DNA from: Zygnema circumcarinatum SAG 698-1b
Taxonomy: Eukaryota > Plantae > Zygnematophyceae
Assembly (NCBI GenBank): GCA_037447605.1
Contig: CM074808.1
Span: forward strand, 3,968,001 to 4,032,000
Length of the DNA stretch: 64,000 nt
Reading direction: 5' to 3'
Shown: in pieces, positions 1,628 to 36,083 of the stretch
Position numbering within the stretch: position 1 is the stretch's first letter
Layout: every line of letters starts with the position of its first letter
Notes under the pieces: model-generated
Told to the model about the DNA's origin: nothing
The model's input: only the letters and a program-made list of their open reading frames with translations
Databases searched by the model: none
Position numbers and translations under genes: made by a program

Positions 1628-1996
1628 TAGTAGCGAACCGTACGCTCACGATTGCGTCCGTCCGTACAGTGCCGTACCCCGTGCGGACGGGTCTCGCGTG
1701 GGCTTCCTTGTTGTTGTTGTTTGATGTTGTTCATGTTCGCTAGCAACATGAACAGGGCGGGAGAGGGAACAGGGAACAGGAAGGGCGGGAGAGAAGAACA
1801 ATCGAACAACAAGGTATGGGCCAAAAACAAAGGCACGCTACCAAAGGCACCACCAACAACAACCTTCAAAAAATCCCAAAAAATAAAACACACCAACAAA
1901 ACATATTGTTCACAAACTACGAAAATGTCTTCTTTTTCCTTCGTGAAAATGTGTACTCCGCTCAATAACCAACCAACCAACCAACCAGCCACGGCC

Positions 1997-3880
1997 TCAA
2001 GCCCCCCCCCCTTGGGGCGCGCCCTCCCCCGGGCCGGCGGCGAGGAGCGTGTACTCGCCCCCGCCCGGCAGCGCCACGACGAGCGGAGCGCTCCCGAAGG
2101 GCCACGCGCCCTGCCGGTGGGCGGCGAGGGCGAGGAGGGGCAGGAGGAGGAGGAGGGGGAGGAGGAGGAGGAGGCCGAGGACCAGGGAGAATGACCGCCA
2201 GAATGTCCAATATATGACTGTTGAGTGAGAAGGAAGGAAGGAAGGCAGTGGGGATGGTGAGTGAACGAAGGAGATCATGCCCCCCCCCCCCCGGCCTTTC
2301 TATCTCTCTCTCGTTCTCTCTCTTTCCTCTCCTCGTTTGTCACTTTCTCCGACTCTTTCTCTCTCTCTTCTACTCTCTCTCTCTCACACACAAACACAAT
2401 CTTTCTCACTCTCTCTCATTGTCCGTCTGTATGTATGTCTCCATCACCCTCTCCCTCTCTCCGCTCTCCCTCTCTCCCCTTCCATCTCACTGCTCCCTAA
2501 TTCCTCGTTCCGCCCCTATCGCACTCGAACCCTCTCGGGCATCCGTGCCTCCTCCCACCTCCCCTTCTCTCCCCTTTCGTGATAAGACTCCTTTAGCCAA
2601 TCGCTCCCTGATTAGAAAAACATTCTAAGAAGAAGAAATGCAGAGAGATTCTCTCATACCTCGCGTGACTTCAACGCTGTACGTTGTGCTGCGGTGGAGT
2701 GGCGCCACCACCACAATCTCAAAGGTGTGCTTCTCGCCATTGCTCCGCAAATAGACGTCAGGACTCGCCTCGCCGCTCTTCACCTCCTCGCCGTCGACAT
2801 ATACACGGAAATCCTCCTCCTCCTGAACCCCGCCATGTCTCCGTACAGACGTTAAGGGAGAGGGAGGGAGAACGAGAGGAGGGGAAGGAGAGGGAGAGCA
2901 GAGGGTAAAGAGGAGAGAAATGAGAAGAGAGGGGGAGAGAAAGAGAAAAATAGGAAGGAGAGAGGGCGTGCGAAGGGTAAAAAGAAACAGGGAGAGAGAG
3001 AGTGGGCGAGAGGGAGTTGAAGCGACGACGAAGAAACAAGGAGAGGTGATTGTCCTAACAAACTAAAGATATAAACGGGAATAAAAAGTTAAAAAGAAAA
3101 CTGGGAGACGAAGTCCTACGCAGACGTTTCCACAGATGCTTTGTCTCCAAAGCAAACTTAAACCAAAGTGATTAGAAGAACCACATCAACTGCTGATGTA
3201 AAGGTTTGGGAAGGCCCACCTGCTTAACCCCCAAGAGAGGGCGGACCGTCACTCGCGAGAGGCGCACTTCTGCGGAGTATTGGAGGGTTTTGGAATTAAA
3301 GGGAGGGTTCAGGGATCCCGGGTATATGGAAAGACCCTCCAAACGGGCGGGAGAGGGAGGGGGGGGAGGAGGGGAGGGAGGAGGGGGAGAGGGAGGGGGT
3401 GAAGGAGGGGGGGGCGAGGGAGGAGGGGGAGGAGAGGGAGGAGGAGGAGGAGGAGGNNNNNNNNNNGGGAGGGGGAGGGTTGGGAGGGGGTGGAGAAGGT
3501 GGGGGACGAGGAGAGGGAGGGGGGGGCGAAGGAGGAGGAGAGGGAGGTGGGCGAGGAGGGGGGGAAGGAGGGGGAGAAGGGGGAGGAGTGGGAGGAGGGC
3601 GAGGAGGAGGGGAACGAGGGGGAGATGGAGGAGGAGATGGGGGAGGAGGAGAAGGGGAAGGAGAAGAACGGGAGGGAGGGGGAGAGGTCGGTGGAGGAGA
3701 TGAAGGGGATCTATCAGGTGGAGGTGAAACCTCTCTCACATCGAGCGAAAGGCCCTGCAGAGTTTGTATGCGCTGCGTCTGCCCTAAAATTTCCCTGCCA
3801 TGGCGCTCCTGCCTCACAGATGCAGATCCAATAGAGAAGAGGAGGAGAGAGAGAAAGAGAGAGAGAGAGAATGAAGCCAT
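1997..3880 (-). CDS. Type I membrane protein: signal peptide + Ser-Pro(n) extensin-like stalk + cadherin-like beta-sandwich (PF12733-like) + TM + short tail
   Basis: Exons 3880-3220, 2822-2660, 2217-1997 with GT-AG junctions and matching phases 0 and 1. N-term MASFSLSLFLSLLLFSIGSA; SPPP repeats; ARLEGLSIYPGSLNPPFNSKTLQYSAEVRLSRVTVRP...FRVYVDGEEVKSGEASPDVYLRSNGEKHTFEIVVVAPLHRSTTYSVEVTR; TM FSLVLGLLLLLPLLLLLPLLALAA. The frame changes across the 10-N gap, which is of estimated length. Confidence 0.8.
3457..3466. other. Assembly gap (10 N) inside the Ser-Pro repeat coding tract
   Basis: Ten n characters in the sequence. Confidence 1.
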
Positions 3881-5011
3881 GGCTGCGAGTGCAGAAGCTG
3901 CCTCCTCCTCCCCTCTGTCTCTCTCACTTGCGGAAAAGCGAAGGTGAAAAGCGAAGGTTCAAAGCGATATGGCCTGCGGTTACGCCGAGGTCGGCGCAGC
4001 GCTTCGCTTCGTGGCCGGCGTCCCCTACGCATGGTTCTATTGTCCATAATCGTCCTCTACACATAATACATCGTCCGCCCGTTGGTGTACTCAATTTTTT
4101 TTTCTAGAAAGGGAGTACGGTAGACGCGTGGAAAATCCGATTCCGCCACGTGCCGTGCTCTCGAAGGCCTCGTATTTACAGCCAATGAAAACACGCCACA
4201 TGGTAACAAAAAGTCGGTAATGTCGGTACCGGCCGGTTGAGGGCGAAAGCGACGCCGGGACTTGACCGGACATTTGGACGATACTCGAAATTTGGCGAAG
4301 GAATTCTCTGGAATAAATTACAGCAAGGAACAAGTTCTTTGGAGATCCCGTCAGTTGTTTGAAATTTCACTGACGATGGAACTGGCACATAGAACCGTTT
4401 CACGTTGCCACCACGTAGGCTGTCCCGTGCTGAGTCAGCATAAAACTGTTTTTGTCTGTTTCTGCGGAATCTGTACGGTTCGTACAATGCTTCTAGAAAG
4501 TCGCCACTTTTGGTGTCGGTGCGGTACACATGAGCGGTAAGAACCATTCAGGGTTTGCCACGTATAACATTGTACACGTGGCAGTCCAGAATTGGCTGGC
4601 CGGATCCCCTCGTGCCAAAGTTTGGTCCCCTGTGGGCGGCATTGTACTTTATTTTGTGTACGGACGAAGGTACCGAGTTCGAACCTCGGGAAGCGCACCT
4701 TCTGCACCACTCTAGATATTTCAGGAAGGGGGGAGGCGTGTGAAGGGTGAGGCCACCATAGTCGACGTTGACGGCCTTCTTTAAGCTCGTCTTACACAAA
4801 ATTTTTGGCCGTTACATTGAGTAGATAGATACATTACATCTTACTGTATTTTATAGAGGAAAGATTTCTCTTTTTTTCGTTTTTTTCTATTCTAATTTTG
4901 GAGTCTCTTGAGCTGCAACCGCATTTTAGGGTTTGCAAGCCTTTGATAAAGCTTGTATTAGGTTTAGGGTGTTGGAAGGCCGAGGGAGGGAGAGATTGAA
5001 GGACGGTGGCC

Positions 5012-32787: not shown

Positions 32788-34988
32788 CCTTTGCGCTTTA
32801 GAGGACCCTTTTTTTTTTGTTTGGAATCATGAGTTTCTTTCGAAGAAGAAGCACGTCTATTGCCCTTTTTGAGGGGCATGTCCGTACAAACTATTTCCCA
32901 CTTGTTCTGTAGCAGTTTGCGGAAAATGAAGTTCTCGGTGGGCATTGTTATTTTTTAATGCTCATTTTGAGCACTCTGAAAATAAATTTCTCCGCAAATG
33001 CTCGTTGGATGGAGGTCCTCCTGCGGGCTTCGGTGTGGCTCCCCTTTCTCCGTCCCTCCTCCCTCCCTGCTTTCCTCCCTCCTTCCCTCTGATCCCTCCT
33101 CTCCTGCTCTCCTTCGCTCCCCCACTCTCTCATTCTGCTCTCTCTCCCATCTCTTTCTCTCTCTCTGCTCTCCCTCTCTCTCAACTCTCTCCCTGTCACT
33201 CCCCCTCCTTCTCCTGCTGCCTACAAACTAACCAGCACGAGCTTCCTTCATGCGTATATCGAATTTTCAATTTTAACTATTGAATTGTTTCACGTGTAAG
33301 GGAAGAACTCCGTTGAACTTGCTGCAAAAACTACTTGGTCCCTTCGTTACTTTTGGTCTAGAATGGGCCAATCATAGTCGCCAGGGTAGGAAAAGTGCAA
33401 ACGTGGCAATCCCTGATTGGCAAGCACTTAAACAGGGCACATTCAACGGAGACCCACCCTTTCTAGTTTTAGAATTTGTTTTCCCAACAAGAGTCGGACC
33501 GTTATGCCGTGGGTGGCGATCTTGGGGTTTGCGGGGCAGGTCAGGAGACTCGGGACAAGGACACGGGAAGCAGAAGTAAACATGACCACTAGTTTTCTTA
33601 CTAGTTTGCAAACTAGGACCTGTTTGTTTTTAACTAAAAATTGTACCGAGGTTCGAACTGTTAAGTTTAGTGACCCGCTTTTGGGCGGGGCCGTGCAGGA
33701 CTTCGATCGGAAGCGAGTGAAATGTCAGAGTTCCAATGACGTCAGTTCTGCGATTCAATCATTCATCGAATCATCTCTCGTTCGTACATTTGTCGGCCAG
33801 TTAACGGTTCCGAATTTTTTCACCGTACGTGCTCGTGTACGGTACTGTATGGGAAAAAGGAGTGATGTACGGTACGCAGTGTCAGGAGATTAGAACAATG
33901 TAGGTAGAGAGAGAGGGAGACCGGGGGGGGGGGGTGGGGGGGCGAAAGGGGGGAGAGAGAGGAAGGCAGAGTGGGAGGGAAAAGATTCGAGGAAGGAAGA
34001 AGAGGGAGAGGCGTACAGGGAGAGAGGAGACAAACAGAGGTGTACACTGAACGGATGAAAAAAAAACATAATGTAAGATAAATGTCCAAACAAAAGAGGA
34101 CCCAAAAGCCTAAAAAATAAAAGATTGCGAATTGACACGTCCCTTTTTAATGAAACGAAAAAGGTAAGGTATAGACATGTTTGCGCTTGACCTTCAGCCA
34201 ACCTTCAGCGAAGCACTGTCGCTCCTTTACTTGCCATGCACTAAATAAAAAAAAAATGACATAAAAGACGTAGATACTTTCGACGATTCCAATCAGCTAC
34301 CGCTTTATACACGTTGAAAGTAAAAAAATTCATCTGCCTAATTTACATTGCATATCTCCTTAAAAAATTCCCCCAGAGCGAGGTGTTCGCACTCCCGCCA
34401 AAAAGTTTATTATATCGTTACATAACTCCTCTGCACTACGAGAGAGAGAGAGAGAGAGGCCTCTGCCGAGGGACGGTTTGGGGTTCAAGAAAATTGCTTC
34501 ACCAATCGCTGCTTCCTTTCGCGTTTTTCTATTTTTGAACAATCTGCTGTTAACTTTTGGCGCGAATTAAGTGGAGACCAATCGATTGTGAATTAAGGAA
34601 ATGCGCGGAGGAAATGGGACATCAGAAGTTTCGTCAGTCGCTGTGGGGCTCGCCCAGGGAGGGCCGCTGTAGTGTGGTGGAGAGGGAGAGAGAGGGAGGA
34701 GGGGGAGGAGAGAGAGGGAGGAGGGGGAGGAGAGAGAGGTGGGAGGGAAGGGGGAGCCGTAGGGCGCAGACAGTTTTTCCTCGCTCCCCCGTCGCCGTCA
34801 GAAGCGACTGTTCGTCAGTTATCGCCACAAGCATGTCTTCCGCGAAGTAATCTCATGCTCTCCTTAAAAACGTCATTTTTTCTTCCCTCAAAGTCACTGA
34901 GTATCATTGATCCGCACCAAAAACCTGTCACGTGTCTCGCTTGCAAGTCACCTCTCTCTCCTCCTCCTCCTCCTCCCCCTTTCCCTAT

Positions 34989-36083
34989 CTACCCCCTCCC
35001 TTTCCTCCCCACCTCCTCCCTCACCTCCCATTCCTCCTTCACCACCTTTCCTCCCTCCCCCCTCCTCCCCCTCCTCCCCCCTCCCCCTCCCCCTCTCCCT
35101 CTCCCCTCCCCCTCCCCCTCCCCCTCCCCCTCTCCCTCTCCCCTCCCCCTCCCCCTCCCCCTCCCCCTCCCCCTCCCCCTCCCCCTTCCCACCCCCCCCG
35201 GCCCCTCGAACCCCAGCACGTCCCCGAAGCGCGGGTTGAGGAAGGCGCTGGAGTGCCCAAAGTTCGTCCTCGCGGCGGCCCCTCTCACAGCGCGCGCCGC
35301 GCGGTCGTACGCGAGCGCGGCCTCCTCCGCGCTCTCGAACGTGCCCAGCCACGCGCGCACGCCGAACTTCACGTCCTTCAGCTCCGCGATCCACCGCCCG
35401 GAGGCGCGCTGCCGCACGCCCTTGTACTTGAGCTCGGAGGCCGACCGCCGCCGGCGCTTGCGAGGGGGAGGGGGAGGGAGAGAGGAGGGAGAGGGGGAGG
35501 GGGAGGGAGAGGGAGAGGGAGAGGGGGCGGGGGCGGGGGCGGATTGGGAGGCGGCATGGAACGAGGGGGCAGTTCCTCGGACTGTTGGGGTTGTGTCGGT
35601 GGAGGAGACGGAGAGGAGGCGGAGGGGGTTCTTTGTGACGGAGGGCTGTTCCGTCGCGACGGACTGATCGGAGGGGCTCCATGCGGAGGCGGAGACAATT
35701 GCGGGTAAGGCGCTTGTTCCGCTGCTGTCTCTCTCTGAGAGAGAGGGTTCAGAGAAGGTGCATTTGACCTCTCCCTCACTCTCTCTCCATCCCTCTCTCC
35801 GTACCTCCTCTGCATCCCACTCCCACTCCCTCTCCCTCCCTCTGTCCCTCTCCGCCTCCAGCCGGAGCTTCGACTCGCAGAGGAAGTCACTGAGCTCCAT
35901 GAGAGGGGATGGAAGGGATGACGTGGTCTCTGCGGGTTCCACCACGTGGCGCGTGCAGGGCGCGCTCCAGCAGCTTCTGGCAGCGTCCATGGGCGGCAGG
36001 TCGTCCGCGGCGGACGGGAACATGTCCCCCAGCAGCCGCGCCCACTCCCGCTCCAGGGCGCAGTTGAACGGATAGTCGGACAT
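34989..36083 (-). CDS. AP2/ERF transcription factor (single AP2 domain)
   Basis: ATG 36083; NLS RKRRRR; AP2 domain [56 protein letters not shown] (~35426-35258). The C-terminal RG/EG tail may be read-through into an intron or UTR. Confidence 0.9.

What the first reader, a model, noticed from the sequence alone, without database searches (positions are those of the whole stretch)
1997..3880. Extensin-stalked, cadherin-like beta-sandwich type I membrane protein
Seen: a spliced gene joining a signal peptide, >100 aa of Ser-Pro2-5 repeats, a ~95-aa domain split over two exons, one TM helix and a ~35-aa tail. Established: the domain pattern (L..L...G.L.P.F......Y...V......V.V...V.V.G..V.SG..S....L......I.V.A.....TY.V.VTR) fits the cadherin-like beta-sandwich best known from bacterial surface proteins, and SPn tracts are Hyp-arabinosylated in green-lineage HRGPs. 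Inference: a wall-plasma-membrane adhesion or sensing molecule of possibly bacterial domain origin. I do not know this architecture from plants. The order is also odd: the stalk is distal and the folded domain is membrane-proximal.
Basis: partly seen in the sequence, partly recalled or inferred. Interest (0 to 1): 0.75.

Follow-up and report, generated by a model that had tools for sequence, protein, structure and literature searches.

The report
Proline-rod membrane protein with bacterial-type domain
This is a real, transcribed three-exon gene of a green alga near land plants; it encodes a single-pass membrane protein that carries a long Ser-Pro rod in front of one bacterial-type "cadherin-like" beta-sandwich domain, a rare build whose function is still only inferred.

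Summary
On the minus strand a three-exon gene (3880..3220, 2822..2660, 2217..1997) encodes five parts in order:
- a signal-peptide-like start;
- at least 123 aa of Ser-Pro(n) repeats;
- a ~96-aa domain split over exons 1 and 2;
- a transmembrane helix;
- a 40-aa tail.

Both proposed splice junctions appear in assembled RNA contigs from two studies. Exon 2 alone passes Pfam's threshold for PF12733, the cadherin-like beta sandwich.

The N gap (3457-3466) lies inside the Pro-rich repeat. As written, its 10 N break the frame. RNA contigs confirm the sequence up to both gap edges, and one runs 35 nt into the gap. The letters shown are compatible with one open frame, but continuity is not proven.

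Among 1.84 billion representative proteins only one has the same core, P0010 (190 aa). It is colinear with all three exons at 44-57% identity but lacks the rod. Every other named hit is a bacterial multi-repeat surface protein.

The rod is therefore a lineage-specific addition to a small, rare type I membrane protein family. The tail motifs AWPFGxAPLV and YxLL are shared by both members.

The wall-to-membrane tether or sensor role is inference. Bacterial origin is plausible but untested. I rate this a new variant of the algal chimeric-extensin kind, of moderate interest.

The parts
3818..3880 (-). Start codon and signal-peptide-like segment (aa 1-21, MASFSLSLFLSLLLFSIGSAS)
   Evidence: It is the first ATG after an in-frame stop, in a GCAGCCATGG context. 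The hydrophobic core scores KD19 1.92, and small residues sit at -3 and -1. No signal-peptide predictor was available.
3728..3817 (-). N-terminal cap of about 30 aa (VRQERHGREILGQTQRIQTLQGLSLDVREV). It matches no family.
   Evidence: no Pfam hit.
3467..3727 (-). Ser-Pro(n) rod, part A (87 aa, 12 S-Pn motifs, several Arg, no Tyr or Lys)
   Evidence: RNA contigs cover 3559-3834 and 3467-3588 without differences (records 13, 14, 20, 21).
3457..3466 (.). Assembly gap (10 N) inside the rod; true length unknown, at least about 20-35 nt
   Evidence: One search shows it is the only gap in the window. One search shows a contig running 35 nt into it from 3467. One search shows those letters differ from 3422-3456, read [10 protein letters not shown] in frame, and end in the same (CCT)n phase.
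3346..3456 (-). Ser-Pro(n) rod, part B (37 aa), in frame with the domain
   Evidence: The RNA contig continuing from 3341 carries exactly these letters.
3220..3345 (-). N-terminal half of the cadherin-like beta-sandwich domain (42 aa, end of exon 1, phase 0)
   Evidence: It is 48% identical to P0010 residues 32-73, E 2e-12. It has no Pfam hit on its own.
2823..3219 (-). Intron 1 (397 nt, GT..AG)
   Evidence: the joint 2821/3219 (cut +1) stands in X1, X2 and X4. Unspliced contigs also occur in X2 and X4 at lower depth.
2660..2822 (-). Exon 2: C-terminal half of the domain (54 aa plus 1 nt, ends in phase 1)
   Evidence: PF12733 at 28.4 bits, E 2.4e-6. It is 57% identical to P0010 residues 72-125.
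2218..2659 (-). Intron 2 (442 nt, GT..AG), with a GA-rich low-complexity core
   Evidence: the joint 2217/2660 stands in X1, X2 and X4.
2120..2217 (-). Start of exon 3: juxtamembrane V-I-Y-WTFWR and the transmembrane span (SFSLVLGLLLLLPLLLLLPLLALAA)
   Evidence: KD19 2.93. It aligns with the P0010 segment modelled as helix 129-162.
1997..2119 (-). Cytosolic tail of 40 aa (HRQGAWPFGSAPLVVALPGGGEYTLLAAG...) and the TGA stop
   Evidence: AWPFGxAPLV and Y-x-L-L are shared with P0010.
1700..1996 (-). 3' untranslated region; it runs about 100 nt further, beyond the stretch laid
   Evidence: records 8 and 15: contigs are continuous from the coding part of exon 3 to below 1700.

Best explanation
Shown: the locus is an expressed three-exon gene for a type I (N-out) single-pass membrane protein. 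In order it has a cleavable signal peptide, a 30-aa cap, and a Ser-Pro(n) rod of at least 123 aa whose true length is hidden by the gap. Then come one PF12733 Ig-like beta-sandwich directly above the membrane, a WTFWR aromatic collar, a TM helix and a 40-aa cytosolic tail. The core of sandwich, collar, helix and tail is a small, rare family. A second member from another organism (P0010) has that core without the rod.

Inferred mechanism: the protein sits in the plasma membrane. By the rules known for green-lineage HRGPs, contiguous prolines in the rod would be hydroxylated and O-arabinosylated. That would give a stiff polyproline-II rod of roughly 40 nm reaching into the cell wall. Its Arg residues could bind acidic pectin non-covalently, since there are no Tyr or Lys cross-link motifs. 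The beta-sandwich at the membrane face and the conserved tail (AWPFGxAPLV plus a YxxPhi-type YTLL sorting motif) would then couple the wall-embedded rod to a membrane or cytosolic partner, or to endocytic cycling. On this reading the protein is a wall-to-membrane tether or wall-state sensor without an enzymatic output domain. The domain type is otherwise overwhelmingly bacterial, so an old transfer from bacteria is plausible.
For: - Gene model and expression: both joints stand in RNA contigs of two studies. Exon and junction contigs are far deeper than intron contigs, and X1 has no intron coverage.
- Colinearity: exon 1, exon 2 and exon 3 match P0010 residues 32-73, 72-125 and 128-188 at 48%, 57% and 44% identity. 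The exon 2/3 junction has the same length in both.
- Domain: PF12733 is above the gathering score for exon 2 and for P0010. The P0010 domain aligns end to end with bacterial repeats.
- Structure: AF2 of P0010 gives pLDDT 83 overall and above 90 for residues 31-126, with 8 strands and then helix 129-162. The nearest Atlas models carry PF12733. PDB matches are Ig-like sandwiches.
- Rod composition.
- TM hydropathy: 2.93.
- Rarity: 29 phmmer hits, of which only P0010 has this build. Word-based searches find only P0010.
- Kind: a review states that green algae have long chimeric extensins not found in land plants (PMC10762512).
Against: - No localisation, glycosylation or binding data exist.
- The family has only two known members, so motif 'conservation' rests on one pairwise comparison.
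- P0010 works without any rod, so the conserved function cannot depend on reaching into the wall.
- The rod lacks the Tyr and Lys motifs that insolubilise classical extensins.
- Continuity across the gap is unproven.
- The signal peptide and topology were judged by eye and hydropathy only.
- The joined domain of this gene itself was not folded. The homologue was folded instead.
Confidence: 0.5

Rival explanations
1. The protein is an accessory or trafficking membrane protein. The conserved core (single Ig-like domain, half-conserved TM helix, tail with a YxxPhi motif) acts as a subunit or chaperone of another membrane protein, or as a cycling cargo receptor. Animal single-Ig TM proteins such as basigin with MCT1 are the model. 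The Ser-Pro rod is then a functionally neutral low-complexity expansion typical of this alga.
For: - P0010 has the whole core and no rod.
- The N-terminal half of the TM (WTFWR-F-L--GLLL) and the tail motifs are the parts conserved outside the domain.
- Foldseek aligns the model, helix included, to basigin in the MCT1 complex over 164 columns, but weakly (E 0.035).
- Earlier scan notes report rods attached to many unrelated domains in this genome (unchecked).
Against: - A rod of at least 123 aa kept in frame and highly expressed is costly if neutral.
- No partner is known.
- The structural match to basigin is generic Ig plus helix.
Confidence: 0.2
2. The protein is a cell-cell, mating or substrate adhesin. 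The rod presents the N-terminal cap outward, as in HRGP agglutinins of Chlamydomonas or Algal-CAM of Volvox, and the protein mediates adhesion during conjugation or attachment.
For: - It has rod-like HRGP architecture with a non-repetitive 30-aa N-terminal cap at the distal end.
- AGP- and HRGP-based adhesion is reported in charophytes (PMC10762512).
- PF12733 proteins of bacteria are surface proteins.
Against: - The folded domain is at the membrane, not at the tip.
- The cap matches no binding module.
- The gene is well expressed in four runs of one study and in another study, with no sign of mating-specific expression, although run conditions are unknown.
- The relative lacks the rod.
Confidence: 0.1
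3. The model is a scaffolding artefact. The gap joins two different genes, so the signal peptide and rod part A (3467-3880) do not belong to the domain-TM gene.
For: - The 10-N gap has unknown content.
- As written the frames disagree.
- No contig was shown to bridge it.
Against: - Both sides carry the same repeat type on the same strand.
- The downstream part has no start codon of its own and is open up to the gap.
- The contig entering the gap reads on as Ser-Pro repeats in frame and ends in the same (CCT)n phase.
- The depth ratio of upstream to downstream contigs is similar in three runs (9.3/5.9, 413/234, 618/373). The tool warns that depth is a weak measure.
Confidence: 0.07

Closest known systems
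P0010, an unnamed 190-aa protein from a 1354-nt Logan transcript contig of run SRR8128905 (organism not retrievable here)
   Same: It has a signal-like N-terminus, one PF12733 domain, WTFWR, a TM helix, and a tail with AWPFGxAPLV and YxLL. It is colinear with exons 1-3 at 44-57% identity.
   Different: It has no Ser-Pro rod, so the domain starts about 10 residues after the signal peptide. Its GC3 is lower (0.50 against 0.64-0.90), so it comes from a different organism.
Bacterial cadherin-like beta sandwich (PF12733) surface proteins, e.g. Paenibacillus WP_248928881.1, Lysinibacillus and Chromatiales MAG proteins
   Same: The domain family is the same. Single repeats align end to end at about 32-41% identity with the P0010 domain and 35-45% with exon 2. 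The predicted fold matches.
   Different: They are giant proteins of 600-5600 aa with 3-14 tandem repeats, and some carry fn3 or T9SS sorting domains. They have no Ser-Pro rod, no eukaryotic type I TM and tail, and no introns.
Chimeric extensins and HRGPs of green algae (pherophorins, Algal-CAM, long chimeric extensins of Liu et al. 2016 as cited in PMC10762512)
   Same: Both pair a signal peptide with a Ser-Pro(n) rod joined to a globular non-HRGP domain, and the kind is common in algae. My own knowledge covers pherophorins and Algal-CAM.
   Different: Those are secreted or wall-bound proteins without a TM anchor. Their heads are pherophorin or fasciclin domains, not PF12733.
Land-plant PERKs and class I formins (e.g. 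AtFH1): extensin-like ectodomain, TM helix and cytosolic effector
   Same: The topology is type I with an N-terminal Pro-rich extensin-like segment outside the cell. They are proposed wall-to-membrane linkers (own knowledge, not tested here).
   Different: They carry a kinase or FH1-FH2 output domain inside and no folded ectodomain. This protein has a 40-aa tail only, with an Ig-like domain between rod and membrane.
Animal Ig-plus-mucin-stalk type I receptors (TIM family, CD8)
   Same: Both have one Ig-like sandwich, an O-glycosylated Pro/Ser/Thr stalk, a TM helix and a short tail (own knowledge).
   Different: The order is reversed. In those receptors the stalk lifts the Ig domain off the membrane, whereas here the domain is membrane-proximal and the rod is distal. 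They are unrelated in sequence.

Membership tests
Pfam PF12733 Cadherin-like beta sandwich domain | Score at or above Pfam's gathering threshold (24.2 bits) | tested here: met
Exon 2 alone scores 28.4 bits, E 2.4e-6, profile 39-88 of 89. The homologue P0010 scores 26.6 bits, profile 6-88. The exon-1 half alone gives no hit.
Pfam PF12733 Cadherin-like beta sandwich domain | All-beta Ig-like sandwich fold of about 90 aa | tested here: met
   Tested on the homologue P0010, not on this protein. AF2 gives pLDDT above 90 over residues 31-126 with 8 strands. Nine of the ten nearest ESM-Atlas rows carry PF12733, with TM-scores by the query of 0.47-0.53. PDB matches are Ig-like sandwiches at Z about 7, including glucodextranase domain B.
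Classical cadherins (animal Ca2+-dependent adhesion repeats) | Inter-repeat Ca2+-binding motifs (DxNDN, LDRE, DxD) and tandem EC repeats | tested here: not met
   There is a single domain, and none of these motifs occurs in the translated domain. No Pfam Cadherin (PF00028) hit was found. 'Cadherin-like' is only the name of the Pfam family.
Classical (cross-linking) extensins | Repeated Ser-Pro3-5 motifs behind a signal peptide | tested here: met
   There are 17 S-Pn (n of 2 or more) motifs in the 124 aa read, at 42-43% Pro.
Classical (cross-linking) extensins | Tyr-based cross-link motifs (YxY, VYK) between the SPn blocks | tested here: not met
   There is no Tyr, Lys or Val in either part of the rod. 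It is therefore an extensin-like rod and chimeric HRGP, not a classical extensin.
Classical (cross-linking) extensins | Hydroxyproline O-arabinosylation | not testable with these tools
   This needs glycoproteomics. It is inferred from the Hyp-contiguity rule (own knowledge).
Type I single-pass membrane proteins | N-terminal signal peptide, one TM helix and a C-terminal cytosolic tail | tested here: met
   Hydropathy peaks are 1.92 at the N-terminus and 2.93 in exon 3. The aligned segment of P0010 is modelled as helix 129-162. No dedicated signal-peptide or topology predictor was available, and localisation is untested.
New small family: sandwich-WTFWR-TM-AWPFG tail (this gene plus P0010) | Colinear similarity over domain, TM and tail | tested here: met
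   Identity is 48%, 57% and 44% over the three exon pieces, E 2e-12, 7e-18 and 7e-11. Only two members are known.

The most novel reading that the evidence does not exclude
A bacterial cadherin-like surface domain was captured by an ancestor of conjugating green algae and built into a new, lineage-restricted type I membrane protein family with its own conserved cytosolic motif. In this alga the family member then gained an extensin-type rod, which created a wall-to-membrane coupling device with no kinase. That would be a kind of wall-integrity or adhesion module not known from land plants.
Probability: 0.2. Interest if true: 0.6.

Novelty: new variant of a known kind. Interest (0 to 1): 0.4.

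Why it matters
Streptophyte algae close to land plants are studied for how the plant cell wall and its surveillance arose. Known plant wall-to-membrane linkers (PERKs, class I formins, WAKs, CrRLK1Ls) all carry enzymatic or cytoskeletal output domains. This gene would be a minimal, kinase-less linker built from an HRGP rod and a bacterial-type Ig-like domain.

It also shows how this alga's habit of grafting Ser-Pro rods onto unrelated domains reaches membrane proteins. It is one more candidate for bacterial domain capture in this lineage.

The practical value is modest. The family has two known members and no functional data.

Tried and rejected
1. Pfam and NCBIfam scans of the cap, rod, exon-1 domain half and exon 3 found nothing usable. 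The only result was a sub-threshold LIC_13387 hit on the TM.
2. A PDB sequence search with exon 2 gave only a chance hit.
3. tblastn of the exon pieces against the 64-kb window found no paralogue, only low-complexity matches.
4. Word-based protein searches with P0010 and with an alignment of P0010 plus the window pieces returned only P0010. The length band of 105-332 aa excludes rod-bearing kin, and the second search was saturated by Leu-rich words.
5. ESM-Atlas feature searches gave weak leads only (0.83-0.90), all pointing to PF12733 or Bacillota clusters.
6. Paper searches for PF12733, for 'cadherin-like beta sandwich' plus algae, and for the run id of P0010 found nothing relevant.
7. I considered an upstream 5'-UTR exon because contigs break at 3916 with a common loose end. 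I rejected it: the 30-mer is not in the window, and the depth ratios of those contigs are discordant with the gene (70 against 9 in X1, 33 against 413 in X2). They come from another transcript sharing a GGAGG-rich stretch.
8. The apparent contig breaks at 3834 and 3341 and the zero depth at 3380-3463 are effects of the tool's repeat masking. They are not splice sites.
9. I did not attempt a phylogeny for the donor. The short query recovered only 29 proteins and no other eukaryotic PF12733 sequences, so a tree would not be informative.
10. The organism of P0010 could not be determined.
Full report
**What is there.**
- Exon 1 runs 3880-3220. It opens with ATG in a GCAGCCATGG context and a hydrophobic, signal-peptide-like segment, MASFSLSLFLSLLLFSIGSAS.
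- A 30-aa non-repetitive cap follows, then Ser-Pro(n) repeats: 87 aa before the N gap and 37 aa after it.
- The repeats hold 17 S-Pn motifs at 42-43% Pro. They contain several Arg and no Tyr, Lys or Val.
- Exon 1 ends with RLEGLSIYPGSLNPPFNSKTLQYSAEVRLSRVTVRPLLGVKQ, in phase 0.
- Exon 2 (2822-2660) encodes EEEDFRVYVDGEEVKSGEASPDVYLRSNGEKHTFEIVVVAPLHRSTTYSVEVTR plus one base.
- Exon 3 (2217-1997) encodes V-IYWTFWR, a Leu-rich membrane span (KD19 2.93) and a 40-aa tail.
- The splice sites are canonical GT..AG.

**The gap, tested first.** The gap at 3457-3466 is the only one in the window and lies inside the Pro-rich repeat.
- As written, the ORF from 3880 continues behind the 10 N in an SSSSSL... 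frame and stops at 3296.
- The frame that leads into the domain starts at 3456.
- Ten N is a placeholder, so this mismatch means nothing.

Contigs of public runs laid on 1700-4200 help in two ways.
- First, the X2 contig that covers 3219-3341 continues for 116 letters. The tool had masked the repeat and laid those letters on 3467-3559 with 21 differences.
- A script shows that all 21 are exactly the assembly's own letters at offset -106, that is 3361-3453. All eleven differences that one search lists by place and letter are among them.
- So RNA confirms the Pro-rich stretch 3342-3456 in frame with the domain, and the contig breaks at the gap edge in an (AGG)n run.
- Second, a contig in X2 and in X4 enters the gap from 3467 by 35 nt. 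Its letters are not those of 3422-3456, so the gap contains real sequence.
- The 30 letters shown read [10 protein letters not shown] on the minus strand in the upstream frame and end in (CCT)n. This is the same codon phase as the (CCT)6 that opens the downstream frame.
- That reading assumes the 30 letters shown are the ones next to 3467.

This is what one continuous ORF predicts. No bridging record was shown, so continuity remains likely but unproven, and the rod's true length is unknown.

**Expression and splicing.** Joints 2821/3219 (equivalent to 2822/3220, 397 nt skipped) and 2217/2660 (442 nt skipped) stand in contigs of X1 (study P1) and of X2 and X4 (study P2).
- X1 has no coverage of either intron's unique sequence, so its joined contig is RNA and not a genomic copy.
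- X2 and X4 also hold unspliced contigs, at 13-159 against 311-984 for the joints. This fits RNA-seq with some pre-mRNA.
- Contigs run at least 400 nt beyond the stop, which marks the 3' UTR.
- The 5' end is not pinned. Contigs end in the CT-rich codons just behind the ATG.
- The contigs that break at 3916 belong to another transcript.

**The domain.**
- Exon 2 alone reaches 28.4 bits (E 2.4e-6) for PF12733, above the curated 24.2, and covers profile positions 39-88 of 89.
- The exon-1 half is too short to score alone.
- phmmer of exon 2 against 1.84 billion representatives gave 29 hits.
- Of these, 28 are long proteins with 3-10 matched stretches. Every one of them that carries an organism name is bacterial: Paenibacillus, Neobacillus, Lysinibacillus, Eubacteriales, Chromatiales, Gammaproteobacteria and Inquilinus.
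- The remaining hit is P0010, a 190-aa protein from a 1354-nt transcript-like Logan contig.

P0010 is colinear with the whole C-terminal part of this gene.

| Window piece | P0010 residues | Identity |
|---|---|---|
| Exon-1 domain half | 32-73 | 48% |
| Exon 2 | 72-125 | 57% |
| Exon 3 | 128-188 | 44% |

- The spacing at the exon 2/3 junction is identical in the two proteins.
- This independent spliced sequence confirms the gene model.
- It also shows that the collar WTFWR, the first half of the TM helix, and the tail motifs AWPFGxAPLV and Y-x-L-L are shared.
- P0010 passes PF12733 over profile 6-88.
- Its domain aligns end to end with bacterial repeats.

**Fold.** The operators' rule forbids joining exons, so I folded P0010 with an alignment of the window pieces and bacterial repeats (A2).
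- The model has mean pLDDT 83, above 90 over residues 31-126, with eight strands and then a helix at 129-162.
- Nine of the ten nearest ESM-Atlas rows carry PF12733, with 98-122 residues aligned at rmsd 1.9-3.5.
- Solved structures give generic Ig-like sandwiches. Foldseek's best is 8yk1_A (E 6e-4, 99 columns, rmsd 3.6). VIA-align gives Z about 7 for HTCS Y_Y_Y, MDGA1 Ig and glucodextranase domain B.
- The fold claim holds at the level of an Ig-like sandwich of the PF12733 type.
- It is not a true cadherin. It is a single domain with no Ca2+-binding motifs.

**What it most likely is.** The shown part is the architecture, the expression and the family relations.
- P0010 has no rod. Its ORF is bounded by an upstream in-frame stop.
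- The old unit is therefore a small type I protein whose whole ectodomain is the sandwich.
- This alga's copy gained the cap and rod between the signal peptide and the domain. That explains the 'odd' order.
- Earlier notes of this scan (unchecked) report Ser-Pro rods grafted to many different domains in this genome.
- A review states that green algae have long chimeric extensins absent from land plants (PMC10762512).
- The kind is therefore known. The PF12733 head and the membrane anchor are the new features.

The mechanism is inference. A Hyp-arabinosylated polyproline-II rod of about 40 nm would reach into the wall and be held non-covalently, since it has Arg residues and no cross-link motifs. 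The membrane-proximal sandwich and the conserved tail would couple it to partners or to endocytic cycling through the YxxPhi-like YTLL.

**Rivals.**
- An accessory or trafficking protein whose rod is neutral. The rod-less relative favours this reading.
- An adhesin.
- A scaffolding chimera.

**Novelty.**
- No paper on PF12733 in algae or plants was found.
- Only one relative was found in very large protein sets.
- Three caveats apply. The 54-aa query has limited reach. The word searches could not see proteins longer than 332 aa. This genome's own proteins are apparently not in those sets.
- Bacterial origin is plausible but untested.

I rate this a new variant of a known kind (algal chimeric HRGP, here membrane-anchored with a bacterial-type domain), of moderate interest.

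**Left out by rule.** The three exons were never joined into one protein for any search, scan or fold.

Noticed in passing
window 2372-2539 (intron 2): A GA-rich low-complexity core of intron 2 is matched by very deep contigs in all four runs (depth 124-3675). This includes X6, which otherwise lacks the gene. One-base indels occur at 2460 and 2463. It looks like a common simple repeat shared by many transcripts or loci.
   Followed up: no
window 3884-3916: Contigs in X1, X2 and X4 match 33 nt of the GGAGG-rich 5' leader and then run on with the same foreign sequence (CCGCTCCACCTCCGCTTCC...), which is absent from the window. Their depth ratios differ from the gene's, so they probably come from another transcript. 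The true 5' end of this gene is therefore not pinned.
   Followed up: partly
window 2403-2689 and 2796-3248: Unspliced contigs covering both introns occur in X2 and X4 beside the spliced forms. Intron 2 appears to be retained relatively more often than intron 1 (159 against 311, compared with 48 against 408, in X2).
   Followed up: no
window 34901-35236 (+): A second Pro-rich open frame of 112 aa (39% Pro, SPPPPSPP and SPSPSPSP runs). It may be an exon of another HRGP-type gene or just low-complexity sequence.
   Followed up: no
L001 1-268: The 5' leader of the P0010 transcript carries CCCTAAA-type (plant telomere or telobox-like) repeats at about 61-110. It also has a CT-rich upstream ORF (MYLHHPSLPLPPSLPLFLLTPV). 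The Pro-rich reading lies in another frame than the main ORF.
   Followed up: partly
window 1997-2217: Exon 3 has extreme GC3 (0.90), against 0.64-0.72 in the domain exons. Its TM helix is encoded by CTC/CCC repeats that give two Pro inside the span, so the membrane segment itself looks shaped by simple-repeat slippage.
   Followed up: no
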